NCBI RefSeq assembly: GCF_046119375.1
Contig: NW_027362762.1
Span: 880,028,001 to 880,092,000, forward strand
Source: Phyllobates terribilis
Taxonomy: Eukaryota
Direction of reading: 5' to 3'
DNA length: 64,000 nt
Translations under genes and position numbers: made by a program
Notes under the pieces: model-generated
The model's input: only the letters and a program-made list of their open reading frames with translations
Told to the model about the DNA's origin: nothing
The model's database searches: none
Shown: positions 3,206 through 64,000 of the stretch, in pieces
Position numbering within the stretch: the stretch's first letter is position 1
How the letters are laid out: the number at the start of each line of letters is the position of its first letter

Positions 3206-4790
3206 TACAGACCAAAAGTTTGGACACACCTCATTTAAAGATTTTTCTGTATTTTCATGACTATGAAAATTGTACATTCACACTGAAGGCATTAAAACAA
3301 TGAATTAACACATGTGGAATTATATACTTAACAAAAAAGTGTGAAACAACTGAAAATATGTCTTATATTCTAGGTTCTTCAAAGTAGCCACTTTTTGCTT
3401 TGATGACTGCTTTGCACACTCTTGGCATTCTCTTGATGAGCTTCAAGAGGTAGTCACCGGAAATGGTTTTCACTTCACAGGTGTGCCCTGTCAGGTTTAA
3501 TAAGTGGGATTTCTTGCCTTATAAATGGGGTTGGGACCATCAGTTGTGTTGTGCAGAAGTCAGGTGGATACACAGCTGATAGTCCTACTGAATAGACTGT
3601 TAGAATTTGTATTATGGCAAGAAAAAAGCAGCTAAGTAAAGAAAAACGAGTGGCCATCATTACTTTAAGAAATGAAGGTCAGTCAGTGCGAAAAACTGGG
3701 AAAACTTTGAAAGTGTCCCCAAGTGCAGTTGCGAAAACCATCAAGCGCTACAAAGAAACAGGCTCACATGAGGACCGCCCCAGGAAAGGAAGACCAAGAG
3801 TCACCTCTGCTTCTGAGGATAAGTTTATCCGAGTCACCAGCCTCAGAAATCGCAGGTTAAAAGCAGCTCAGATTAGAGACCAGGTCAATGCCACACAGAG
3901 TTCTAGCAGCAGACACATCTCTTCAACAACTGTTAAGAGGAGACTTTGTGCAGCAGGCCTTCATGGTAAAATAGCTGCTAGGAAACCACTGCTAAGGACA
4001 GGCAACAAGCAGAAGAGACTTGTTTGGGCTAAAGAACACAAGGAATGGACATTAGACCGGTGGAAATCTGTGCTTTGGTCTGATGAGTCCAAATTTGAGA
4101 TCTTTGGTTCCAACCACTGTGTCTTTGTGCGACGCAGAAACGGTGAACGGATGGACTCTACATGCCTGGTTCCCACCGTGAAGCATGGAGGAGGAGGTGT
4201 GATGGTGTGGGGGTGCTTTGCTGGTGACACTGTTGGGGATTTATACAAAATTGAAGGCATACTGAACCAGCATGGCTACCACAGCATCTAGCAGCGGCAT
4301 GCTATTCCATCCGGTTTGCATTTAGTTTGACTATCATTTATTTTTCAACAGGACAATGACCACAAACACACCTACAGGCTGTGTAAGGACTATTTGACCC
4401 AGAAGGAGAGTGATGGGGTGCTATGCCAGACGATGTGGCCTCCACAGTCACCAGACCTGAACCCAATCGAGATGGTTTGGGGTGAGCTGGACCGCAGAAT
4501 GATGGCAAAAGGGCCAACAAGTGCTAAGCATCTCTGGGAACTCCTTCAAGATTGTTGGAAGATCATTTCCGGTGACTACCTCTTGAAGCTCATCAAGAGA
4601 ATGCCAAGAGTGTGCAAAGCAGTCATCAAAGCAAAAGGTGGCTACTTTGAAGAACCTAGAATATAAGACATATTTTCAGTTGTTTCACACTTTTTTGTTA
4701 AGTATATACTTCCACATGTGTTAATTCATAGTTTTGATGCCTTCAGTGTGAATGTACAATTTTCATAGTCATGAAAATACAGAAAAATCT
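3203..4790 (+). mobile_element. Tc1/mariner DNA transposon, right terminus truncated
   Basis: Left end TA|CAGTACAGACCAAAAGTTTGGACACACC. The long inverted repeat (about 3240-3400 vs 4630-4790) is present, but the outermost roughly 35 bp of the right end are missing. Confidence 0.92.
3614..4666 (+). pseudogene. Tc1 transposase (DD34E) with two in-frame nonsense codons
   Basis: Paired-like HTH, GRPR, WSDESKFE, FQQDND, WPPQSPDLNPIEMVW. ORFs 3614-4291 and 4394-4666 share a frame; stops at about 4289 and 4328. Confidence 0.93.
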
Positions 4791-5714
4791 TTTTCTTATT
4801 TTTTCACATTGCACCCTCAAACTTTTGTATTTTATCTGGCTTTTATGTGATATATCAACACAAAGTAGTACGTATTTAAAGTGTAAAGTAAATGATACTT
4901 GGTATTTTAAATATCTTAAAAATAGAAATCTGAAAATTGTGACATGTATTTGCACTCAGCCTCTTGTAGTGCGATACCCCTAACTAAAATCCTGAGTTAC
5001 CAATTGCCTCCAGAAGTCACATAATTACTAGTGATGAGCGAGCATACTCGCAAGTACTCGGTACTCGCCCGAGCATCTCAGTACTCGAGATGCTCGGAGC
5101 TCGCCGAGTACTTGCGAGATGCTTGGGCGGATGCTCGGGTCCCCTCCCTGCAAGTTTGGCGCTCTTTACAGAGCCAATGAACATACAGGGATTGCCTGCC
5201 ACTCATTGTAATGCCGCAGCCATGGTGGTTGGGGCATTACAGTGATTGGCTGGCTGCACAGCGTCATCAGGTCTATAACAGACCTGGCGCCACTGTGCTC
5301 GTCACAGTCACTCCGGAATCAGACAGTGTAGGGAGAGGTGCTGCTGAGCTAGGGAGAGATTTGCTTGTTTATTAGGCAGTGTAGATAGAACAGAAGCATA
5401 TTACACATATCCATCTCAACAAACAGTTCTTCTGAGGACTTATCCATCTGCAAAGATATCAGGCAGGCAGGGTGTATAGCAGACTGCAGTGCACATAGCA
5501 CAAGAGACTCCATTCCATTTTTGTCTGCTGCTGCTGTTAGACATTTCTAGACATAGGCCCAGGTCTCAGGGGCCAGGAATAATTTTTTTTTGGATCTTAA
5601 TCCTCATTATTTGCTTAAAAAGCAATCCAGAGAACATTGTTTATCTGCGCCATTTGCTTGTTGGCACTGCAAAATACAGCCAGGTCCTTTCCATATTACA
5701 GCGCTAAAAATCCA

Positions 5715-10928: not shown

Positions 10929-12029
10929 TTGTGGATAAGAGTAAAACAGGGTTATGTTATAAAAAAAATAGCCCAAGCTCTGAACAGGGCTGGTCAGCTG
11001 AAGGCAGGGCACTTCAAAGTATCGGCAGAGTCAGTCGGCACCACGCATGACCGAGCTCACATCAGGATTCCTCTGCCTGAATGCTGCTTTAAAGTGCGGA
11101 GGCTTCAGCTGACGAGCCCTGTGATATACTTCATAATGATCAGCACATCGCAGGGCATGTCAGCTGAACAGATGGACGGCACTTCAAAGCAAGATTCAAG
11201 CAGAGAGGAGAGTGAGGTCTGATCTAATCATGCTCAGTCTGCTGTACGTAGCCCCACACCCCCCAGTGACCTGCCCTGCTCGGTTTCTCCTAATTTGGTC
11301 CTCAGACCAGAAGTTGTAGAGCCAGAATCAAAACAGAAGGATATATGACCCAGAGAGAGATGAACTTACAGGAGCAGGGCAGGTAATAAAAGTGTATTAG
11401 AAAAATGTTAGCTAGGAGGAGTAAGGACAAATGAAAAGGGGTTAAATTAGTAGTGGAAAAACTCTTTAAAGGGAATCTGTCCGGCATTTGATCTATCTAA
11501 ACTATTAATATGGGCTTACAGGTTATAGACTGCTGAAAAAGTCCTCCCTGTATGCCTCATATCAGATGCTTTGTTGCTGATCATCTAGATTCTTTTATCA
11601 CTTTATATAAATGACCTCTTCCAGGCTGTGGGTAGGATGCTGCCTGATGATAACTCTGCCTCCAGAGCTTGTTTAACTTGAAGGAGCAGTTACCAGTGTG
11701 AGACAAGTTACTAACACAGAACAGGAGAAATGAACTCTGTCTGCTTGCAAAGGGTTTTTGCAACTCTCTGAGCTCTGCTGTATTGCAACAATATTACAGC
11801 CCTGTCTGCCTGTGAGATGGAATCTGAAGCTGAGAGGAACCTGCAGTACAGTGTCCATTTTAGGACATGATCAGATATCAAAATCAAACATGAGAATGAT
11901 GTCAGTTTGAGGCTAAATACCCTGTCTGAGAGCTGATTTGGACAGTGATTTTGATATGTGACTTTGACAAGTGACTTTGATAAGGGACTTTTACAACTGT
12001 AATAATAGTAATAAAAAAAAGTCACTGTT

Positions 12030-12096
12030 CGCTTATGGGACTTGAATCCAAAACTCTATGTATAGAAGCCAGTTCACTAACCATTGAGCTATAAAC
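12030..12096 (-). other. tRNA-like Pol III cassette, Arg(TCT)-like loop; mirror copy at about 13980-13993 plus 14948-15005 (+)
   Basis: A box TAGCTCAATGG, CTTCTA(T/G) loop, B box GG(A/G)TTCAAGTCCC, then a T run. The cloverleaf stems are imperfect, so this is not called a functional tRNA. Confidence 0.6.
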
Positions 12097-12235
12097 TCAG
12101 TTGAAGAAATATAGGCATTCTACTTGGTAGATTTTCAGTGCAAACTTGTCTGAAACTTATTGGGATTTTAACAAATACCTCCTCAAAGCCAAATTCAAAT
12201 GATGTGTGATTTTGATGTGTGAATATGATGTGTTA

Positions 12236-13061
12236 GGCTGTGTGCCCATGTAGCGTTTTTCAAGCGTTTATGCTGCGGAATTTCCGCAGCATAAACGCTT
12301 GTGAAACGCTAGGTAATCCGCACCCCATGGTCCCCAAGGGGATTCCGCATGTTCTATGCACATGCTGCGGATTTTTCCGCAGCGTTTATGCTGCGTACAA
12401 AAATCCGCAGCATGTCATTTAATTTTGCGGAAGCGCAGCGGAACTCCCACCATTGACTTGCATTGAGACGCATAGAAACCGCGACTCTACATTTGTACAA
12501 GCGGCTTCTATGCGTCTCTATGTGCGGATGGTACCCAGTTCTGGAGGAGAGGAGACTCTCATCCAGACCTGGGTACCATTGTACCTGTAAAAAAAAGAAT
12601 AAAATAACAAATAAAGTTTATACTCACCTTTCCGAAGGCTTCTCTCTAAATGCCGGCATCGCTTGAGGACCTGCGGTGACGTCACAGTCATGTGACCGCA
12701 GGCCCTTCACCGCTCTGTCTCGCAATATGCCAGCATCCAGGAAGCAGAGAGGAACGAGCGCTGCAGCCACGCCGGGCATCGGGGGTGAGTATAGCTTTAT
12801 TTGTTTTAATTTTTACGGTTCACACTGTATAAATCCATGCTGTTTGCATGGATTTATACAGTGTGACCTAGTTGGTCAAGCACTTTCCAAGTGATGCTAT
12901 CGCCTGGAAAGTGCTTGTCAATCTGCATGCGGAAACGCATGTGAATCCGCATGTGGATCCGCATGTATTCTGCAGGAAAAACGCATGCACAATTCTGCCA
13001 GGGAGATGCAGAAATGCTGCAGAAATTTTCTGCTTCATTTCTGCATCGTGGGCACATAGCC
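12236..13061. mobile_element. PIF/Harbinger-type MITE
   Basis: TIRs GGCTGTGTGCCCA and TGGGCACATAGCC; flanks TTA/TGA. Confidence 0.8.
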
Positions 13062-13169
13062 TGACTTTCTACAAACATCAGAATCAGAATCACAATGACT
13101 TTTAGTCACCCTGAGTATTTTCATGGTTGATCTCATAAGACTAGAAAAGCTACAAGTCATTTTCCACTT

Positions 13170-13232
13170 GACCTGATGACTGAATGGTAAAGCACCAGCC
13201 TCTGAAACTACAGTGTCAGGGTTCAATATCCC
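13170..13232 (+). other. tRNA-like Pol III cassette, Gln(CTG)-like loop; mirror copy at about 13688-13750 (-)
   Basis: TG(A/G)CTGAATGGTAAAGCA, loop CTCTGAA, GGGTTCAATATCCC, then a T run. Confidence 0.55.
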
Positions 13233-13993
13233 AATAGAAATAGAATCTTTTCTTTTTTTTTAACTTTGGTTAGTTAGCATACAAACTACAGGGTGTTTTA
13301 CTTTTAATATCTGACATTCTGATTGTCATCCTGATGTGTTTAGAGTTTCAGACATGCTGTCTATTTGCATGATAAATTACATAGCCAAAGTAAATTGGGA
13401 GTTTGCAGCCAGTTCTTGGGTGGATGGAAAGAAAAATTTACAATAAAGAAATTTTATCATTAGACCCTTTTAAGAAATTATGCAAATGTACAGTCACTTG
13501 GAAACAGACATGTAGTAAATTATTGCCTCCCAAATTACTTTGGCTATGTGATTTACCATGCAAATAGACAGCGTGTCTCAAACTCTTAACACGTCAGGAT
13601 GACAATCAGAATGTCACATATTAAAAGTAAAACACCCCTGTAGTTTGTGTGCTAACTAGGCATAATAAAAAAAAAAATCTATTTATATTGGGATACAAAC
13701 CCAAACACTGTAACTTCAGAGACCGATGCTTTACCATTCAGCCATCAGATCAAGTGGATAGTAACTGGAAGCTTTTCTTGTCTTATGAGATCAACCATGA
13801 AAATACTCAGGGTGACTAAAAGTCATTGTGATTCTGATGTTTGAAGAAAGTCACACATCAGACTCACACATCGTTTGAATTTAGCTTTGAGGAGGTATTT
13901 GTTAATATACCAATGAGTTTCAGACAAGTTTGCACTGAAAATCTCATAACCAAATAGAACGTCTAGTTTTCTTCAACTGAGTTTATAGCTTTA

Positions 13994-14947
13994 GGCTATG
14001 TGCCAACGATGCAGAAATGCTCTGGATTTTTCCTGAGCATTTCTGCATCTCCCTGGCAGAAAAAAACGCATGTGGATTTTACATGCGTTTTTTCAGCCAG
14101 GGACAAGCGTTTGTCACTCGTTTTACACATGCGATTTCGCATGCGGGTTGTCAAGCGCTTTCCAAGCGATTTTAGCATCCCTTGGAAAAGTGCTTGACAA
14201 CTTGGTCACACTATATAAATCCATGCAGCCGGCATGGATTTTATATAGTGTGACCAAGTTAGTTAAAAAAAAGAATAAAGTAGTAAAAAAAATGGTAAAA
14301 AATAAAAAAAAATTATATTCCTTTCCGATGCCTCCTGGTCTCCTTCTCTGATGCGTCCAGTCTCCCCGGTGTCTCACTGTGGTGTAAAAGGTGGTGTAAA
14401 AGGACCTTCCATGACGTCATTTAGTCATGTGACAGGTCACGCGACCGTCGACGTCACATGACTGAATGACGTCATGGAAGGTCCTTTTACTTCATTGCGA
14501 GCCACCGGGGAGCCAAGACGTACCGAATAGAAGACCGCGGGCCATCAGAAGGTGAGTATAAAGTGTTTTTTTTATTTTAAATTCTTTTTTTTTTACAGGT
14601 ACTATGGTACCCGGGTTTGGATGAGAGTCTCCTCTTCTACAGACCCGGGTACCATCCGCACATTGAATCGCTTAATATCCACATGTGCACATGTAGTCAT
14701 GCGGATATTAAGCGATTCAATGCAAGTCAATGGCGTCAAAAACGCTGCGATTACGCAAAATAATTGGTAGTGCTGCGGATTTTTCCGCAATGATAATCCG
14801 CAGCGGAAATTTCCACAGCATGTGCACAGCACATGCGGATTATCATTGGGGAACATGGCAGACCTTCTACCAAGCGTTTTTTAAGCGTTTCTGCGGCGGA
14901 ATTGCTGCTGCAGAAACGCTTAAAAAACACATAGTGGGCACGCAGCC
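13994..14947. mobile_element. PIF/Harbinger-type MITE, same family as 12236-13061, opposite orientation
   Basis: TIRs GGCTATGTGCCAAC and GTGGGCACGCAGCC; flanks TTA/TAA. Confidence 0.8.
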
Positions 14948-16172
14948 TAATGGTTAGTGCACTGGCTTCTAGACATAGAGTTTTGGGTTCAAGTCCCATC
15001 ATCGAACAGTGACTTTTTTGTTATTATTACAGTTGTAAAAGTCCCTTATGAAAGTCACTTATCAAAGTCAGTTGTCAAAATCAGTTCTCAGACAGGGTAT
15101 TTAGCCTCAAACTGACATCATTCTGATGTTTAATTTTGATATCTGATCATGTCCTAAAATGGACAATGTACATACACATCACAGTGGTAGCCCCCCCTTC
15201 TATTGAAAATAAGCTCTGTAGGAGTACCATATTTTTTGGACTATAAGACGCACCCTAAGTTTAGAGAAGGAACATAGGAAAAAAATGAATTTTTAACCTG
15301 TCATCAGGATCAGACATGTCAGGGGTCATCGAATGTAGCTTACCAGGGGGCGGTGGCTGTGCAGCGGGGTCACAGGAGGCAGGAGTAGGGTCACATTAAG
15401 GTCATTTGACAGCAGGAGTAGGGCGATGCTATGGGCCCTGGGCTAGGAGAATGGGGTGTCCCGGTGGTGCAAGGAAGGAACAGAGTTCCCGCTGCGCACA
15501 TTGATTTCCCGGCAGTCTTCAGTAAAAGCGCGGTCTATAAGAGCTGCGCTTTGCGCATGCGCCGGGAGGTGAGGAAGGAAAGCGCACGGCACAGCGCCCT
15601 GTGAAGTGCGGGGGAGGGAAAATGGTAACTAGGCTGATAGGCGGCGATTTAGGGGAATAATAATCAGATAGGCGGGCATTGCTTGGCGTCCCCCAGACGC
15701 CAAGCCTGTTGAAAACCAAAAAGATAAAACTACTTTTCTCTGCAAGCAGACCTCTACTATGGGCCATACAGGTATGTATACATTTAATTTTCTATACCCT
15801 GTATGCTCCGATAACTCCCAGGGGGTGACAGATTCCCTTTAATAGTTTAGATAGGTCAAATGTGATGACAGATTCCATTTAAGTGTATTTTATTGGGATT
15901 TTGTAAAGCTAGTTTGCAAAGAAGGAAGGGCAAAAATTTCAGCCTCTAAATTTGCAAAGCAGCTAGAGAAATACCACAAGAATCTTGCAGCAGTAATGGC
16001 ATCGAAAGGTGATCCTACAAAGGGGGGCTGAACACAAATGCACGTCACAATTTTCAAATTTATATTTTTTAAATATCTAGAAAACCATGTATCATTTCCT
16101 TTACACTTCACAAATACAGTACTTGCTACTTAGTGTTGGTATATCACATAAAACCCAATAAAATACATCTAA

Positions 16173-17509: not shown

Positions 17510-17650
17510 TTCTGCGCAGATGCGCGTTGTACAGGACTACAATTCCCGGCAGCCATCTCTTCGGCCGCCACACAAGATTACGGCTCTTGATTAGAGCTTG
17601 TGCTGGAACTACAGTTCCCGGCAGGCTTGGCGTCTGGCTCCGCCCCCTAT
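17510..17650 (+). promoter_or_regulatory. CPOX proximal promoter: two ZNF143/THAP11-type motifs, a GC box and an NRF1-like site
   Basis: ACTACAATTCCC 17536-17547, ACTACAGTTCCC 17608-17619, CTCCGCCCC 17638-17646, TGCGCAGATGCGC 17513-17525. CpG-rich; no TATA box seen. Confidence 0.7.
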
Positions 17651-17731
17651 AGTAGACGTGCGGAATGTCACTGCACATATAGCGCTGTCACCCGCTGCCC
17701 GGGGCTTGTGGTGCTGCTGCTGCTGGCCGTC

Positions 17732-18143
17732 ATGTCTTTGAAGGCTGTGTTACTGGCTGGCCGGGCTGTGCGGGGGAGGCTGCCGCTGTCCTCTATGTGC
17801 GGCGGTGCCCGGGCCGTGCACGGCGCTGCTCTCCGCTCTTCTGCTCGCCCGTCTCTGCTGGTGGCTGCGGGCGCCGCGGTGACTGCCGGGCTGGTAGCGG
17901 GGTACAGTCATCTGCAGCGGGCGGACATGGCCTCGGTGGACCGCGGGCAGGATCTGGAGAAGCGCATCGCGGAGTTCATGGCTCCGCCGGTCACTGAGCT
18001 GGAGAGGCTGCGGCGGAGCGGGGACGACATGAAGACCCGCATGGAGCTGCTCATCATGGAGACCCAGGCGGAGGTGTGCCGGGCGCTGGAGGCGGCGGAC
18101 GGGGGGGCCGGCTTCACAGTGGACTGCTGGCAGAGGACGGAGG
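17732..18143 (+). CDS. CPOX: CPOX exon 1: mitochondrial presequence, hydrophobic sorting segment and start of the catalytic domain
   Basis: MSLKAVLLAGRAVRG...LLVAAGAAVTAGLVAG...QRADM...FMAPPVT...MKTRMELLIMETQAEVCRALE; donor G|GTGAGT, phase 1. Confidence 0.95.
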
Positions 18144-18172
18144 GTGAGTGATGGACTGCAATGGAGTGGTGT

Positions 18173-20040
18173 CAGGTGCCCCTCCCCCCCCCCCCCCCCC
18201 CCCGCCGCCGGGGGCACTACAGGTGCCAGAGTGCCCCCCTCCCCGTACTGTTGCCGGGCGCAGTACAGGTGCCAGAGTGCCCCCCGCACTGCCGCCGGGC
18301 GCAGTACAGGTGCCAGAGTGCCCCCCCCTCCCCGCACTGCCGCAGTACAGGTGCCAGGGTGCAGCCCCCCCTCCCCGCACTGCCGCCGGGCGCGGTACAG
18401 GTGCCAGAGTGCCCCCCGCACTGCCGCCGGGCACGGTACAGGTGCCAGAGTGCCCCCCGCACTGCCGCCGGGCGCGGTACAGGTGCCAGAGTACCCCCCG
18501 CACTGCCGCCGGGTGCGGTACAGGTGCCGGAGTGCCGCCCCCCTCCCCGCACTGCTGCCAGGCACAGTACAGGTGCCAGAGTGCCCCCTCCCCGCACTGC
18601 CGCCGGGGGCAGTACAGGTGCCAGAGTGCCCCCCCCCCCTCCCTGCACTGCTGCCGGGCGCAGTACAGGTGCCAGAGTGCCCCTCCCCGCACTGCCGCCG
18701 GGCGCAGTACAGGTGCCAGGGTGCAGCCCCCCTCCCAGTACTGCCGCCGGGCACAGTACAGGTGCCAGGGTGCCGCCCCCCTCCCCGCACTGCTGCCAGG
18801 CACAGTACAGGTGCCAGAGTGCCCCCTCCCCGCACTGCCTGCCCCCTCCCCGCACTGCCGCCGGGGGCAGTACAGGTGCCAGAGTGCCCCCCCCCCCTCC
18901 CTACACTGCCGCCGGGCGCAGTACAGGTGCCAGGGTGCAGCCCCCCTCCCAGTACTGCCGCCGGGCACAGTACAGGTGCCAGGGTGCAGCCCCCCTCCCC
19001 GTACTGCCGCCGGGCGCAGTACAGGTGCCAGGGTGCAGCCCCCCTCCCAGTACTGCCGCCGGGCACAGTACAGGTGCCAGGGTGCCGCCCCCCTCCCCGC
19101 ACTGCTGCCAGGCGCAGTACAGGTGCCAGAGTGCCCCCTCCCCGCACTGCCTGCCCCCTCCCCGCACTGCCGCCGGGGGCAGTACAGGTGCCAGAGTGCC
19201 CCCCCCCCCTCCCTACACTGCCGCCGGGCGCAGTACAGGTGCCAGGGTGCAGCCCCCCTCCCAGTACTGCCGCCGGGCACAGTACAGGTGCCAGGGTGCA
19301 GCCCCCCTCCCCGCACTGCCGCCGGGCGCAGTACAGGTGCCAGGGTGCAGCCCCCCCTCCCCGCACTGCCGCCGGGCACAGTATATGTGCCAGGGTGCAG
19401 CCCCCCCTCCCCGCACTGCCGCCGGGTGCGGTACAGGTGCCGGAGTGCCGTCCCCGCACTGCCGCCGGGTGCAGTACAGGTGCCGGAGTGCCGTCCCCCC
19501 TCCCCGCACTGCCGCCGGGTGCGGTACAGGTGCCGGAGTGCCGTCCCCCCTCCCCGCACTGCCGCCGGGTGCGGTACAGGTGCCGGAGTGCCGTCCCCCC
19601 TCCCCGCACTGCCGCCGGGTGCGGTACAGGTGCCGGAGTGCCGTCCCCCCTCCCCGCACTGCCGCCGGGTGCGGTACAGGTGCCGGAGTGCCGTCCCCCC
19701 TCCCCGCACTGCCGCCGGGTGCGGTACAGGTGCCGGAGTGCCGCCCTCCCCGCACTGCCGCCGGGCACGGTACAGGTGCAGGAGTGCCGCCCCCCCCTCC
19801 CCGCACTGCCGCCGGGCGCTGTACAGGTGCCGGAGTGCCGCCCCCCCCCCCCCCTCCCCGCAGTGCCGCCGGGCGCGGTACAGGTGCCGGCCCCCCCTCC
19901 CCGCAGTGCCGCCGGGCGCGGTACAGGTGCCGGCCCCCCCTCCCCGCAGTGCCGCCGGGCGCGGTACAGGTGCCGGCCCCCCCCTCCCCGCAGTGCCGCC
20001 CCCCCCTCCCCGCACTGCGGCCGGGCGCTCTACAGGTGTC
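18173..20040. repeat. GC-rich minisatellite (units of about 40-50 bp) in CPOX intron 1
   Basis: Unit like TCCCCGCACTGCCGCCGGGTGCGGTACAGGTGCCGGAGTGCCGTCCCCCC (50-bp period at 19501/19551), with a higher-order duplication of about 310 bp. Confidence 0.97.
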
Positions 20041-22275: not shown

Positions 22276-22589
22276 GGAACCTGTCATGTTGAAAATGACA
22301 TTTGATCTGCAGGCAGGATGTTAAAGAGCTGGAGGAGGGGATCAGATTGTATACTTTTTTTTTTTGTGGGGCAAAGATTCATTAAAACTTAATATTTTAT
22401 TCATTGACGTTCCTGGTGTCTGTATACAGGAGTCCAGTGGGTGGTGCTATTCAGTGATTGACAATCTACCCTGTATGACCTTGCATGTAGAGATGGGTGT
22501 CAATCACTAGTAGGACCGCCCACTGGACTTGTGCATACAAACATCGGGGATTTCATTGAATAAAATGCAGGTTATACTGTATCTTGTCC

Positions 22590-22960
22590 AACAAACCTAC
22601 AAACTCTGGCCCGCGGGTGAGTATATTTGGCCCTCGAAATTAGGCAGGGCTATTATTCTGAATGGAGAACTATGGGGGGCCATTACACTGTATGGGGGAC
22701 AGTTATACAGTATGGAGGACTATGTGGGCCATTATACTGTGTGTAGGACTATGGGGGACCATTATACTGCACGGAAGGCAATACAGGGCCCATTATACTG
22801 TGTGGAGGACTATGGGGGACCATTATACTGTATAGAGCACTATGTGGGGCCCATTATACTGTACGGAAGGCAATACAGGGCCCATTATACTGTGTGGAGG
22901 ACTATGGGGGACCATTATACTGTGTGGAGGACAATGGGGGCCCTTTATACTGTATGGAGC
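22590..22960. repeat. 30-31-bp minisatellite inside a hAT-like MITE remnant (intron 3)
   Basis: CCATTATACTGTGTGGAGGACTATGGGGGA-like units; preceded by CAAACTCTGGCCCGCGGG. Confidence 0.8.
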
Positions 22961-23430
22961 ACATTACAGAATACACTTGCGAGCACATTCTGTAATGTAC
23001 CCATATGCACCCATTCGCTAGGTGGAGGCCAAAAGCACGTTCTTTCAACCTACTTCTGGCTGCTATGCTCAGGCATCTACAGAGGGCTACTGCAAAGAAG
23101 CGTATACCATGCACTATACAGTGGGTCTCTATGGTGGACGGATCCCCGGCATCCATGCTGGCAGTGCCGCTGTCTGGCACATACCTCCTGAGAGCATGCG
23201 CCCAGTAGTGGGCAGCGAGCATTACAGATGATTGGCAGCCGATTTACACTGTCCTATCATCGGGTAAAGCACGTTTCTAGGAGGACTTGTTCTCACTATG
23301 TGGCCAGTGTGAACGCAGCCTTACACTTTGGTTGCCTTGCTCAGTGCAGCTGATAGTTTTCATGATATTTTAATGTTGGTGACTGATGTTTGCCTGACTC
23401 GTGACTGACTGTCTTATTTTCTTACCTTAG

Positions 23431-44992: not shown

Positions 44993-46065
44993 AAATTAAA
45001 CGCGTCTTATGGCATGATGAGAGTGATGTTCATAAACAAAAGTTATTTTGTGAGATCTTTTTTTTTTTTTTCATTTATTTGCAATTTACCAAGGAAAGTG
45101 TACCATACTATTGATGTTAAATTCCTCTTTGTCTGGAAGTCCTCGGAACATCATTACATCATTGACCAAATGTGGTTACAATAGGGAATTTTGAGTTATT
45201 AGACTCCAAATAGTAGTCGGCACAAATTAGCATAGTTCAGAGAGGGTCTGGAACATTTACCCCAGTCTGCAGTATGAGGTTCATCAATCGATTTCAATGA
45301 TTTGTCCTTCCTCAACGGTCAGCTCCCTCTGGGCTAGTCTGCACAGTGTTACTATAGTAATTTGGCATGCATCTCTTATTTCATCATCGAAGGCCTTTGA
45401 AGGCCAGCTCAGATGGTGCGTGCTGCCTGAGTATTCAGGTAGTAGTGTACTCTCCTACAATATACTTTACAGAAGTCAAGCCACAATTTGACTTGGCTGT
45501 GCTCCAGCCAGGTGTCTAATTATCTTCTTAGTTTCTTCCTACTTCAATACAGCAACAAACTGTATTACCAAGCTCAGTCCAGTTTTCCTGGTGCTGTAGT
45601 ACTCTCAAGTCTGCTTCATCGGGGTATCTAATTACCAACTCCTCTAAGCCAATCCTTGTGCTGTCACTCCCTGATTACTAGCTTGTCTCAGTTTATCTTG
45701 GTGCTGGACTCACAACTCTGCTGTTCCTTTTGTTACCATACTACTGTAACAAGGTGCCAGACTGCCTACACCTCTCTGCTGTTCCTGTGCTGTCCACACA
45801 TTGGGGTCTGCTGCACCTAATGCTTTCAGCTCTGATTATCCATCTACTGTCCAACATATTCAGCTGCTCTGGCACTTGCTCTTCCACGTGCCACCTGGCA
45901 AAACCAACCCCACGGTATTTTCATCTCCAGTCCATCCTGCTCACCCTGACCTATGGCTGAGTAAATCCTGCTCACTGGATGGACCCATGTCAGAATACTC
46001 AGTCCATGGATTCCAAATGTCCAGCGGGCATCAACACATTTTTGCTACTGGTCACTGAGGACCTA

Positions 46066-47691
46066 CAGTGGGTACAGAAAGTATTCAGACCCCTTTAAAT
46101 TTTTCACTCTTTGATTTCAGCCATTTTGGTAAATTCTAAAAAGTTCATTTTTTTCTCATTAAAGTACACTCTGCACCCCATCTTGACTGAAAAAAACAGA
46201 AATGTAGAAATTTTTGCAAATTTATTAAAAAAGAAAAACTGAAATATCACATGGTCATAAGTATTCAGACCCTTTGCTCAGTATTGAGTAGAAACACCCT
46301 TTTGAGCTAGTACAGCCATGAGTCTTCTTGGGAATGATGCAACAAGTTTTTCACACCTGGATTTAGGGATCCTCTGCCATTCTTCCTTGCAGATCCTCTC
46401 CAGTTCCGTCACGTTGGATGATGAACATTGGTGCACAGCCATTTTCAGGTCTCTCCAGAGATGCTCAAATGGGTTTAGGTCAGGGCTCTGGCTGGGCCAG
46501 TCAAGAATGGTCACAGAGTTGTTCTGAAGCCACTCCTTTGTTATTTTAGCTGTGTGCTTAGGGTCATTGTCTTGTTGGAAGGTGAACCTTCGGCCAAGTC
46601 TGAGGTCCAGAGCACTCTGGAAGAGGTTTTCATCCAGGATATCTCTGTACTTGGCTGCATTCATGTTTCCTTCAGTTGCAACCAGTCGTCCTGTCCCTGC
46701 AGCTGAAAAACACCCCCATAGCATGATGCTGCCACCACCATGTTTCACTGTTGGGATTGTATTGGGCAGGTGATGAGCAGTGTCTGGTTTTCTCCACATA
46801 TACCACTTAGAATTATCACCAAAAAGTTCTATCTTCGTCTCATCAGACCAGAGAATCTTATTTCTCATAGTCTGGGAGTCCTTCATGTGTTTTTGAGCAA
46901 ACTCTATGCCGGCTTTCATATGTCTTGCACTGAGGAGAGGCTTCCGTCCGGCCACTCGGTCATAAAGGCCCGACTGATGGAGGGCTGCAGTGATAGTTGA
47001 CTATGTGGAACTTTCTCCCATCTCCCTACTGCATCTCTGGAGCTCAGCCACAGTGATCTTGGGGTTCTTGTTTACCTCTCTCACCAAGGCTGTTCTCCCA
47101 CGATTGCTCAGTTTGGCTGGACGGCCAGGTCTAGGAAGACTTCTGGTGGTCCCAAAGTTCTTCCATTTAAGGCTTATGGAGGCCACTGTGCTCTTAGGAA
47201 CCTTGAGTAATGCAGAAATTCTTTTGTAACCTTGGCCAGATCTGTGCTTTGCTACAATTCTGTCTGTGAGCTCCTTGGGCAGTTCCTTTGAGCTCATGAT
47301 TCTCATTTGGTCTGACATGCACTATGAACTGTGAGGTCTTATATAGACAGGTGTGTGCCTTTCCAAATCAAGTCCTATCAGTTTGATTAAACACAGCTGG
47401 ACTCCAATGAAAGAGTAGAACCATCTCAATGAGGATCACAAGGAAATGGATATGTGACTTAAATATGAGTGTCTGAGCAAAGGGTCTGAATACTTATGAC
47501 CATGTGAGATTTCAGTTTTTCTTTTTTAATAAATTTGCAAAAAATTCTACATTTCTGTTTTTTTCAGTCAAGATGGGGTGCAGAGTGTACTTTAATGAGA
47601 AAAAAAAGAACTTTTTAGAATTTACCAAATGGCTGCAATGAAACAAAGAGTGAAAAATTTAAAGGGGTCTGAATACTTTCCGTACCCACTG
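46066..47691 (-). mobile_element. Full-length Tc1 transposon; transposase (about 47297 to 46278) broken by a frameshift
   Basis: TA|CAGTGGGTACAGAAAGTATTCAGACCCC...GGGGTCTGAATACTTTCCGTACCCACTG|TA; long IR/DR ends; GRPAKL, WSDETKIELFG, FQQDNDPKH, SPDLNPFEHLW. Confidence 0.95.
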
Positions 47692-49059
47692 TATATCGAA
47701 AGGTTTTGCAACTTGCATTGAGCCAACAGAAGGTGGTTCAGGCAGTCAATATGGAAACACTGCATCAATGTCTTGCTGTTTCACCTCTGGCTCCTCAACA
47801 TCTTCTATAGCCTCACTCTTATCCAGGACGTTGTTATTGGTGATCATCTCCACATTTGCCGACTTCTGCTCACTTTGATATAGGTCCTAAGGCCTGCCAG
47901 GGTTTTGTAACTCGATGCACCATACACTTTGAACTGGAGATATCTGTAGATGCCTTGTCATCTGAACTGGCTTGAACAATAGTGCTCTTCTGGCAATTTT
48001 CTATGCTAGTATACCTAGCTAGTTAAAGGATGAACTTGTCATTTTCCCTTGATGATCTGATTTCTTTGCCAGCCAAGTGGATATATATTTAAAGAAAAGT
48101 CAAGGGTGAATGCTCAAGATTATTGGATCCCACATATTAGAGCATCTTTAAAATCTCCTCTCATAGGGGCTAAATTGAAACCCATGCAAATTGGCCAGAA
48201 GAAATTATCATTGGCCGAAAGAAAAAAAAAAAATGTTCACACTCACATGGACTTTTTAAAATCCAAGGCTAAACAGGTAAACTTCAAACCCTAGGCAAAA
48301 TAGGAGGGATAGCATTGGGGTTAACACTGTACTCCTCCACAGACAAGTTTGCTTTGCCAATATCTATTATCTTTAGTTCCTCTGAGGTCACGGGACAAGC
48401 CTTCATTGATTCCAGAGCTGCATAGGTTTACTTGATCCTTGATTAGCCATAAACCTGAAAATTCCTTTTGTTTTTCTGTGGATGGCACTGAAACTTATGA
48501 ATGAATGGTTCAGTAATTTTTATGGTGGTTGTATCCAATTTCAGACTGAAGGGGTTGGAGCACTATACGTTGAGAACATTTCTTTTCAGTTTTGCCATTT
48601 TCTGACAGATCAACGTTTTCGCAAATTCTGTGACTAAGGCTATGTGCTCCGGCAATTGATTGGTCCTTTGACAAGATCATCTAGTGGGGATCTTGTTTTC
48701 AAAATTACTTTAAAGCTTTTCCTCAACCACATTCTCTGAAACTCTACCCTGTTTCCATCACCTCCTATTTGCTATTTCCATATCAGGACTTTGCAGAAGT
48801 TGTTTTCAAACAGAAGGCCTTAATGCTACCGCCTCATCAAGAATTGGGGTTGCCCTGCATTCAGATACAGGATCGTTGCATCAGGTATGCCAATCAGCAT
48901 TGCCTCCCTCCGTGATTAGCCCTCCACACTATTCATATTGATCACTAAGTCTTTCCTCATTGTAACAGCGCCAACCTGACAATGCCTATAGTTTACTTAG
49001 CAAAATTCTGATGACAGGTTCCCTTTAAGTGCGATGATATTTTAACACAGTATTCATGG

Positions 49060-63003: not shown

Positions 63004-64000
63004 CAGGGCCGGCTCCAGGTTTTTCTGTGCCCCTGGCGAAAGAGTCTCAGTGGGCCCCTTTAACACATACCACGATTCATGATGCAGAGATACCGCAGAG
63101 AAATATATATATATAGTACAATGCAAAGATTTCACTTCATGAGTGATATCTATTGTAAATTCCACAATAGCTCAGAAACCGGTGAATCGCTCCACACAGA
63201 ATAGTGGCCCCCATATAAGGCTCCATACGGAATACTGGTCCCCATATAACGCCCATACGGAATACTGGCCCCCATATAACGCTTCATACGGAATACTGGC
63301 CCCCATATAAGGCCCCATACGGAATACTTGCCCCCATATAAGGCCCCATACGGAATACTGGCCCCCATATAAGACCCCATACAGAATACTGGCCCCCATA
63401 TAAGACCCCATACGGAATACTGGCCCCCATATAAGGCCCCATACGGAATACTGGCCCCCATATAAGGCCCCATACGGAATACTGGCCCCCATATAAGACC
63501 CCATACGGAATACTGGCCCCCATATAAGACCCCATACGGAATACTGGCCCCCATATAAGACCCCATACGGAATACTGGCCCCCATATAAGGCCCCATACG
63601 GAATACTGACCCCCATATAAGGCTCCATGCGGAATAATGACCCCCATATAAGGCTCCATGCGGAATACTGACCCCCATATAAGGCTCCATGCGGAATACT
63701 GACCCCCATATAAGGCTCCATGCGGAATACTGACCCCCATATAAGGCTCCATGCGGAATACTGGCCCCCATATAAGGCTCCATACGGAATACTGGCCCCC
63801 ATATAAGGCTCCATACGGAATACTGGCCCCCATATAAGGCTCCATACGGAATACTGGCCCCCATATAAGGCCCCATATGGAATACTGGCCCCTATATAAG
63901 GCTCCATATGGAATACTGGCCCCCATATAAGGCTCCATAAGGAATACTGGCCCCCATATAAGGCTCCATACGGAATACTGGCCCCCATATAAGGCTCCAT
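63004..64000. mobile_element. hAT-like MITE left end followed by a 31-bp satellite running off the window
   Basis: CAGGGCCGGCTCCAGG terminus at 63004; units GGAATACTGGCCCCCATATAAGGCCCCATAC from about 63200 to the end. Confidence 0.8.

What the first reader, a model, noticed from the sequence alone, without database searches (positions are those of the whole stretch)
11849..15168. Foldback DNA element whose arms carry four tRNA-like Pol III cassettes with terminators
Seen: a TA-flanked element with CAGTG-type termini and inverted arms of about 720 bp. Each arm has two divergent tRNA-like cassettes. One is Arg(TCT)-like and points outward (A box TAGCTCAATGG, B box GGGTTCAAGTCCC). The other is Gln(CTG)-like and points inward (TGGCTGAATGGTAAAGCA..CTCTGAA..GGGTTCAATATCCC). 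Each is followed within about 10-25 nt by a run of six or more T. Known: A/B boxes recruit TFIIIC/Pol III, and tRNA heads normally mark SINEs, not TIR elements. Inference: a Tc1/mariner-mobilised carrier of Pol III units that could yield small RNAs or dsRNA hairpins, or act as a TFIIIC insulator a few kb upstream of CPOX. I do not recognise it as a described family.
Basis: partly seen in the sequence, partly recalled or inferred. Interest (0 to 1): 0.7.

Follow-up and report, generated by a model that had tools for sequence, protein, structure and literature searches.

The report
Worn foldback transposon with tRNA-like units
This is an old, broken copy of a gene-less cut-and-paste transposon in a frog-like genome whose two mirror-image arms each carry two tRNA-derived units that look like small RNA polymerase III genes; the layout is real and unusual, but nothing shows that the units are used.

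Summary
Window 11849-15168 is a TA-flanked element with CAGTG-type ends and mirror arms of 722 and 683 nt once two nested insertions are removed. Each arm carries two divergent tRNA-like units, each with an A box, a B box at tRNA spacing and a T run. This pattern occurs 3 times in 64 kb, all inside the element, against 0.05 in shuffles.

The units are not tRNA genes. ARAGORN finds none, Rfam gives at best 23.7 bits (threshold 29), and the predicted RNAs fold no better than shuffles. Between the arms the units are no better kept than the rest (88.6% against 91.4%, p=0.28).

Two Harbinger-type MITEs of a far more abundant family have landed in the arms. One of them splits the A box of the right outer unit.

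Contigs from other runs show family copies without the first nested insert, so this is a repeat family and not a local palindrome. The tRNA-like stretches have the lowest depth in the arms, so they are not pieces of a commoner SINE.

No transposase partner lies in the window, and there is no expression evidence. The element ends about 2.5 kb upstream of the CPOX start codon.

The scan has found this family before on other DNA of the same genome (s1-201007, s1-204965, s1-196810, s1-224984). It is a new variant of a known kind, of modest interest.

The parts
11847..11848 (.). TA target-site duplication, left
11849..11944 (+). Left terminal inverted repeat, begins CAGTGTCC. It is 94.8% identical to the right end and is the best-kept part of the arms.
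   Evidence: (I4)
11944..11996 (+). 13-nt tandem direct repeats (consensus AGTGACTTTGATA), 3.7 copies. The right arm has one unit fewer. They may be transposase-binding repeats; that is inference.
   Evidence: (D2)
12013..12098 (-). Left outer tRNA-like unit, pointing towards the end of the element. A box 12081-12091, B box 12038-12049, T8 12013-12020. This is the best-kept unit of the four.
   Evidence: The only Rfam match is Vault at 18.6 bits, below its threshold of 34.
12236..13061 (.). Nested MITE N1 (826 bp, ends GGCTGTGTGCCCA). Flanked by TTA (12233-12235) and TGA (13062-13064). It belongs to a hyper-abundant family.
   Evidence: (a contig joins 12222 to 13061; depth about 1e6)
13170..13261 (+). 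Left inner tRNA-like unit, pointing towards the loop. A box 13177-13187 (1 mismatch; the family majority has G at 13179), B box 13219-13231, T9 13253-13261.
13291..13401 (+). Inner part of the left arm, 93% complementary to 13527-13637
   Evidence: I3
13402..13526 (.). Central loop of 125 nt, shared by other family copies
   Evidence: record 4 spans 13398-13585
13667..13751 (-). Right inner tRNA-like unit. A box 13734-13744, B box 13691-13702 (2 mismatches), T11 13667-13677. It is the only unit that the Rfam tRNA model sees: 23.7 bits against a threshold of 29, with D and T arms paired and the anticodon stem unpaired.
13979..13990 (+). 5' piece of the right outer tRNA-like unit. Its A box is cut after TAGCT.
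13994..14947 (.). Nested MITE N2 (954 bp), same family as N1 (71% identical). Flanked by TTA (13991-13993) and TAA (14948-14950). It lies inside the A box of the right outer unit.
14951..15019 (+). 3' piece of the right outer tRNA-like unit. B box 14985-14996 (0 mismatches), T6 15014-15019.
15073..15168 (-). Right terminal inverted repeat; its end reads CATTGTCC on its own strand
15169..15170 (.). TA target-site duplication, right

Best explanation
This is an old, immobile copy of a non-autonomous foldback DNA transposon of the Tc1/mariner type. It has no gene of its own. It would have been moved by a transposase supplied in trans that recognises the end sequences, and perhaps the 13-nt direct repeats just inside them (inferred). 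It inserted at a TA about 2.5 kb upstream of the CPOX start codon.

Since then the two arms have drifted about 10% apart and one end has mutated. Two Harbinger-type MITEs have landed in the arms, at different places in each arm.

Each arm inherited two divergently oriented tRNA-derived units from the family's founder. They keep the internal promoter layout of an RNA polymerase III (Pol III) type-2 gene: A box, B box 42-43 nt downstream of the A-box start, and a T run 13-21 nt after the B box. They have lost the tRNA cloverleaf. If active, each would give an RNA of about 75-85 nt. The left and right copy of a unit would give the same RNA, not complementary ones.

In this copy the units decay like the surrounding DNA, and one is destroyed. 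The most likely reading is that they are passengers: a pair of tRNA genes or pseudogenes, or tRNA-like Pol III units, captured once when the family arose and then mirrored with the arm. They are not working parts of this locus.

Shown: the anatomy, the repeat-family status, the promoter-like pattern beyond chance, the failure as tRNAs, and the lack of preferential conservation between the arms. Inferred: the superfamily and the transposase dependence, capture as the origin, and the absence of function.
For: - TA flanks, CAGTG-type ends and the unique 22-nt end motif.
- Mirror arms 90.7% identical, K2P 0.10.
- Only short open frames, at most 114 aa, and an arm ORF with no relatives.
- Family status: thousands-fold word depth over the arms and loop in four runs of two organism labels. 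A 573-nt contig joins 12222 to 13061, which is a copy without N1 that links the outer and inner units. A 254-nt contig spans the loop.
- Promoter pattern: 3 hits against 0.05 in shuffles.
- Not tRNAs; fold z-scores between -1.3 and -0.1.
- Units 88.6% identical between arms against 91.4% for the rest, Fisher p=0.28. The inner unit is the most diverged part, at 84.5% with 11 transitions.
- N2 splits the right outer A box. A 3-bp duplication model restores the other arm's length exactly at both nested sites.
- The bins holding the units have the lowest depth in the arms.
Against: - Only one copy could be read in full here, so conservation across the family could not be measured. Equal decay of two arms of one dead copy says nothing about selection on master copies.
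- The boxes are near consensus while the stems are gone. That pattern is what selection for Pol III or TFIIIC binding would give, although finding the units by their boxes biases this.
- No transposase partner with matching ends was found. The two Tc1-like elements in the window have other ends.
- The runs guessed to be RNA are contigs only, so they cannot show or exclude short Pol III transcripts.
Confidence: 0.72

Rival explanations
1. The units are working parts of the family. They would be Pol III-transcribed small-RNA genes or TFIIIC-binding sites kept by selection, for example to hold chromatin open, to block silencing of the transposon, or to act as insulators. This copy would then be a dead example of a functional design.
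For: - Promoter pattern far beyond chance.
- Boxes near consensus although the cloverleaf stems are lost.
- T runs follow all four units at tRNA-gene distance.
- The same layout was reported on other DNA of this genome and is seen in a contig of another copy.
- The family majority restores the A box of the left inner unit, with G at 13179.
Against: - There is no expression or binding evidence.
- The units are not better kept than the rest between the arms, and the inner unit is the worst-kept part.
- One unit is split by a MITE with no sign of selection against that.
- The predicted RNAs have no excess structure.
- The four units are only two independent observations, because the arms are copies of each other.
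Confidence: 0.12
2. The units are heads of a tRNA-derived SINE, or two SINE fragments, that sat in the founder half-element before it was mirrored. On this reading the element is an ordinary foldback MITE with old retroposon debris.
For: - Good boxes with a decayed cloverleaf are typical of SINE heads.
- An earlier scan note reports a common tRNA-derived SINE in this genome (s1-230080; not checked here).
- The two unit types are 59% alike in register, z about 5.
Against: - Each unit is followed by a T run within 13-21 nt of the B box. There is no SINE body or tail, and a T run there would stop a SINE's own transcript.
- The unit-bearing bins have the lowest depth in the arms, so no commoner family at 80% likeness or more shares them.
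- No other tRNA-like head occurs in the 64-kb window.
- SINEs are reported as nearly absent from amphibian genomes, including a dendrobatid (PMC11152451).
- The flanks of the two units share nothing.
Confidence: 0.14
3. It is not a transposon at all, but a local palindromic duplication of DNA that happened to hold two tRNA pseudogenes.
For: There is only one copy in the window and no transposase partner.
Against: - Exact TA flanks and Tc1-type ends.
- High word depth over the arms and loop in all four runs laid, under two organism labels. Contigs of other copies lack N1, and others span the loop, at 85-90% likeness.
- Other copies were noted elsewhere in the genome.
Confidence: 0.02

Closest known systems
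Tc1/mariner-derived MITEs and long-hairpin non-autonomous elements (Stowaway-like elements; zebrafish Angel, recalled from memory)
   Same: TA duplication, inverted ends, no coding capacity, high copy number, whole element able to fold back
   Different: The arms are unusually long at about 700 nt. They carry two tRNA-derived Pol III-type units each. No autonomous partner with the same ends was identified here.
Foldback (FB-type) elements of Drosophila and similar long-inverted-repeat transposons (from memory)
   Same: Most of the element is two long inverted arms around a short loop
   Different: FB arms are built from tandem subrepeats. Here only a 13-nt motif is repeated, 3-4 times. The TA flanks and CAGTG ends point to Tc1/mariner instead.
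tRNA-derived SINEs
   Same: A tRNA-related head with A and B boxes and a decayed cloverleaf
   Different: There is no body or tail, and a terminator follows each head directly. The units sit in mirrored pairs inside a TIR element that moves as DNA. PMC3845634 uses tRNA homology and a Pol III promoter as the features that tell SINEs from MITEs.
tRNA genes and B-box-only TFIIIC sites acting as chromatin boundaries (established knowledge, not tested here)
   Same: A/B-box architecture and T-run terminators; the divergent pair resembles a small tRNA gene cluster
   Different: No cloverleaf and scores below every tRNA threshold. Binding of TFIIIC is not shown.
PIF/Harbinger-type MITEs (applies to the nested inserts N1 and N2 only)
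   Same: 3-bp T-W-A-like duplications, inverted ends, very high copy number, palindromic interior
   Different: The duplications are imperfect in both copies (TTA/TGA and TTA/TAA). The superfamily is inferred from duplication length and flank consensus only.

Membership tests
Tc1/mariner-superfamily non-autonomous element | 2-bp TA target-site duplication | tested here: met
   TA at 11847-48 and 15169-70; no longer duplication
Tc1/mariner-superfamily non-autonomous element | Terminal inverted repeats with CAGTG-type ends | tested here: met
   Left end CAGTGTCC, right end CATTGTCC (one change). The terminal 96 nt are 94.8% alike.
Tc1/mariner-superfamily non-autonomous element | Dispersed multiple copies | tested here: met
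   Depth and contigs of other copies in four runs. Other copies are noted; I could not read them.
Tc1/mariner-superfamily non-autonomous element | An autonomous partner with the same ends that encodes a DD(E/D) transposase | tested here: inconclusive
   Two Tc1-like elements in the window carry HTH_Tnp_Tc3_2 and DDE_3 domains but have different ends. The rest of the genome was not searchable.
tRNA gene | Cloverleaf, or a covariance-model score above threshold | tested here: not met
   ARAGORN finds 0. Rfam best score is 23.7 bits against 29, for one unit only. Fold z-scores are not significant.
tRNA gene | Internal A and B boxes at tRNA spacing, with a downstream T-run terminator | tested here: met
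   Three units pass the strict pattern; in one of these (the right outer unit) the hit uses a junction sequence made by N2 and the true A box is split. The fourth unit has 2 mismatches in its B box.
tRNA-derived SINE | tRNA-related head followed by a body and a LINE-related or A-rich tail, with its own flanking duplication | tested here: not met
   A T run follows each head within 13-21 nt of the B box. There is no body, tail or own duplication.
tRNA-derived SINE | The head is shared with an independently amplified, commoner family | tested here: not met
   The unit-bearing bins have the lowest depth in the arms. Caveat: summed contig depth is a rough measure.
Foldback (FB-type) element | Long inverted arms built from tandem subrepeats | tested here: not met
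   Long arms are present, but the only tandem repeat is a 13-nt motif at 3.7 copies.
PIF/Harbinger-type MITE (nested N1, N2) | 3-bp TWA duplication and inverted ends | tested here: met
   TTA/TGA and TTA/TAA. Removing the insert plus 3 bp restores the other arm exactly in length. The flank consensus of other copies begins TA (loose ends at 13062 and 14948).

The most novel reading that the evidence does not exclude
The family may be a DNA transposon that carries working Pol III / TFIIIC modules as part of its arms. If so, many dispersed, mirrored pairs of TFIIIC-binding sites or small-RNA genes have been spread through a giant frog genome by cut-and-paste transposition. They might protect the element from silencing or act as chromatin boundaries, including near promoters such as that of CPOX.
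Probability: 0.1. Interest if true: 0.7.

Novelty: new variant of a known kind. Interest (0 to 1): 0.3.

Why it matters
tRNA homology and an internal Pol III promoter are normally used to tell SINEs, which move through RNA, from MITEs, which move as DNA. A TIR element that carries such units as a family trait blurs that rule and can mislead automatic repeat classification.

If the units bind TFIIIC or are transcribed, a DNA transposon would have scattered many Pol III-type sites through a very large genome. That would be a new route for spreading boundary elements or small-RNA genes.

This particular copy is worn, and one of its units is broken. It illustrates the family and the layered history of insertions rather than any activity. 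The scan had already met the family elsewhere in this genome.

Tried and rejected
- Other copies in public collections. Exact-pattern scans of metagenome contigs and viral contigs found nothing, as expected for a vertebrate repeat.
- Family copies through spurious ORF calls. A word search with the 62-aa arm ORF gave no hits.
- Other copies, or an uninterrupted paralogue of the flanks, inside the window. There are none.
- Relaxed ARAGORN thresholds. The hits are no better than in shuffled arms: 46 per 200 at 80% and 417 per 200 at 70%.
- The Rfam matches to MIR8562 (66 bits against 211), trpB, various miRNAs and Vault are all far below threshold. They reflect generic hairpins or the A/B boxes.
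- An internal inverted duplication as the origin of the two unit types. Their flanks share nothing, with z of 2.3 or less.
- An inner copy of the end sequence, as in an IR/DR layout. None was found.
- Literature. There were no hits for the sequence motifs or for TIR elements with tRNA-like units.
- A search of earlier findings by sequence was blank.
- Depth ratios between the runs guessed to be RNA and the DNA run were not used as expression evidence, because all the runs are contigs.
Full report
**What is there.** Window 11849-15168 is bounded by TA on both sides (11847-48 and 15169-70). It begins CAGTGTCC and ends with the reverse complement of CATTGTCC. The 22-nt end motif occurs only at these two places in 64 kb, with 0 expected.

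Self-comparison resolves the interior into mirrored blocks:
- A, 11849-12085
- B, 12087-12233
- nested insert N1
- C, 13065-13401
- a 125-nt loop, 13402-13526
- C', 13527-13853
- B', 13851-13990
- nested insert N2
- A', 14951-15168

With N1 and N2 removed the arms are 722 and 683 nt. They are 90.7% identical in 678 aligned columns, K2P 0.10.

**The nested inserts.** N1 (12236-13061) and N2 (13994-14947) are 71% identical copies of one family and lie at different positions in the two arms. They are therefore independent insertions made after the foldback existed.

At both sites, removing the insert plus 3 bp restores the sequence length of the intact arm exactly. The flanks are TTA/TGA and TTA/TAA. 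In other copies the flank after the last base begins TA (loose ends). This fits a PIF/Harbinger-type MITE.

Summed contig depth over N1 and N2 is about 1e6 in the DNA run, against 4e3 to 4e4 over the arms. N2 sits inside the A box of the right outer tRNA-like unit. The A-box match that a pattern scan reports there is made by the insert's own end.

**Is it a mobile family?** Yes, at the level I could test. All four runs laid carry many contigs at 80-99% likeness over the arms and the loop. The runs carry two organism labels; one is a DNA run and three are of unknown or guessed RNA type.
- A 573-nt contig joins 12222 to 13061. It comes from a copy without N1 that links the outer and inner units.
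- A 254-nt contig spans the loop into the right arm.
- Where this copy's left arm differs from the family majority (11892, 13179, 13195), the right arm agrees with the majority.

The scan's earlier notes describe the same layout on other DNA of this genome. I could not read those copies. The left flank (11500-11846) is itself a repeat whose other copies continue differently after 11846, and three runs hold a joint from 11721 to 15222. This is compatible with insertion into an older repeat but too imprecise to count as an empty site.

Two Tc1-like elements with transposase domains lie in the window, at 3237-4792 and 46064-47693. Their ends differ from this element's beyond CAGT, so the mobilising partner is unknown.

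**The tRNA-like units.** Each arm has an outer unit pointing to the end and an inner unit pointing to the loop (coordinates in parts).

I scanned for a strict pattern: A box TRGCNNANNGG and B box GGTTCRANNCC with at most one mismatch each, 36-55 nt apart, and T5 or more within 45 nt. It gives 3 hits in the window, all in the element, against a mean of 0.05 and a maximum of 1 in 100 dinucleotide shuffles. The fourth unit has two B-box mismatches.

They are not tRNA genes:
- ARAGORN finds none at 100% or 90% thresholds. Its low-threshold hits are no better than in shuffled arms.
- No Rfam family reaches its threshold anywhere in the window.
- Only the right inner unit matches the tRNA model, at 23.7 bits against 29. 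Its D and T arms pair but its anticodon stem does not, and there is no acceptor stem.
- The left outer unit matches only Vault RNA, through its boxes, at 18.6 bits against 34. The left inner unit matches nothing relevant.
- Predicted transcripts fold no better than shuffles, with z of -1.3, -0.1 and -0.6.

The two unit types are 59% alike in register, z about 5, and share nothing in their flanks. That is no more than a common tRNA ancestry would give. The isotype labels 'Arg' and 'Gln' cannot be upheld.

**Are the units kept?** Between the arms the units are 88.6% identical and the rest is 91.4%, Fisher p=0.28. The inner unit is the most diverged segment, at 84.5% with 11 transitions and 2 transversions. 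The terminal 96 nt are the best kept, at 94.8%. One unit is split by N2. In this copy the units behave as neutral DNA.

This does not test selection on master copies. That needs a family-wide alignment, which I could not build because only tables of laid contigs were available and one call was allowed.

**Origin of the units.** Several points speak against a SINE-fragment origin.
- A T run follows each unit within 13-21 nt of the B box, with no body or tail.
- The unit-bearing bins have the lowest depth in the arms (4.2e3, 7.7e3 and 8.3e3, against 1.3e4 to 4.2e4 elsewhere), so no commoner family shares them.
- No other tRNA-like head lies in the window.
- SINEs are reported as nearly absent in amphibians (PMC11152451).

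One point speaks for it: good boxes with lost stems are the usual state of SINE heads. I favour capture of a divergent pair of tRNA genes, pseudogenes or tRNA-like Pol III units next to one transposon end, followed by mirroring of that half-element. This is inference.

**How it could work, and what is unlikely.** If active, each unit would give an RNA of about 75-85 nt. Because the arms are mirror images, the left and right copy of a unit give the same-sense RNA and cannot pair with each other. The inward unit is followed by T9 and then two T4 runs within 50 nt. A Pol III-made hairpin across the loop is therefore unlikely. A long hairpin RNA would need read-through by another polymerase across the whole element.

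Nothing here bears on TFIIIC binding.

**Context.** Pfam matches on exon-sized frames confirm CPOX on the + strand (motifs). The first exon frame is 17591-18148, with a presequence-like start near 17732. The element therefore ends about 2.5 kb upstream of the start codon.

**Known or new.** I found no paper describing a TIR element whose arms carry tRNA-like Pol III units. One MITE study uses exactly these features to separate SINEs from MITEs (PMC3845634). The poison-frog genome papers I opened do not mention such a family.

I file it as a new variant of a known kind, a Tc1/mariner-type foldback MITE with an unusual cargo. The species was not verified here. Run names are coded, and 'poison frog' comes from earlier scan notes.

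**Verdict.** The structural interpretation is supported and the functional one is not. This copy is a degraded member of a family the scan has already reported, so interest is modest.

Noticed in passing
window 12236-13061 and 13994-14947: The nested MITE family is hairpin-rich and about 30-100 times deeper in contig depth than the foldback arms. Both copies carry perfect 5' splice-site look-alikes (AAGGTGAGTATA at 14549-14560, and its mirror at 12619-12630). An earlier scan note (s1-196801) describes such look-alikes in palindromic MITEs.
   Followed up: partly
window 18192-20000: A GC-rich (74-80%) minisatellite of about 1.8 kb with 41-50-bp units, open in all three + frames. It lies directly after the first CPOX exon frame and is presumably in intron 1.
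   Followed up: partly
window 3237-4792 and 46064-47693: Two Tc1-like transposons with long inverted ends (235 nt at 97%; 157 and 53 nt at 96-98%) and transposase frames broken into pieces. Their ends begin CAGTACAGACC and CAGTGGGTACAG and are unrelated to the foldback's ends.
   Followed up: partly
window 11500-11846: The left flank is another repeat. Many contigs stop at 11846 and continue differently, and three runs hold a joint from 11721 to 15222. This suggests the foldback landed inside an older repeat.
   Followed up: partly
window 22514-23188 and 63153-64000: Long open frames with a reiterated Gly/Tyr-rich motif (such as GPLYCVEDYGG and GALYGGQYSVWSLIWGPVF) that look like translated tandem repeats. 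One of them lies inside the CPOX gene region.
   Followed up: no
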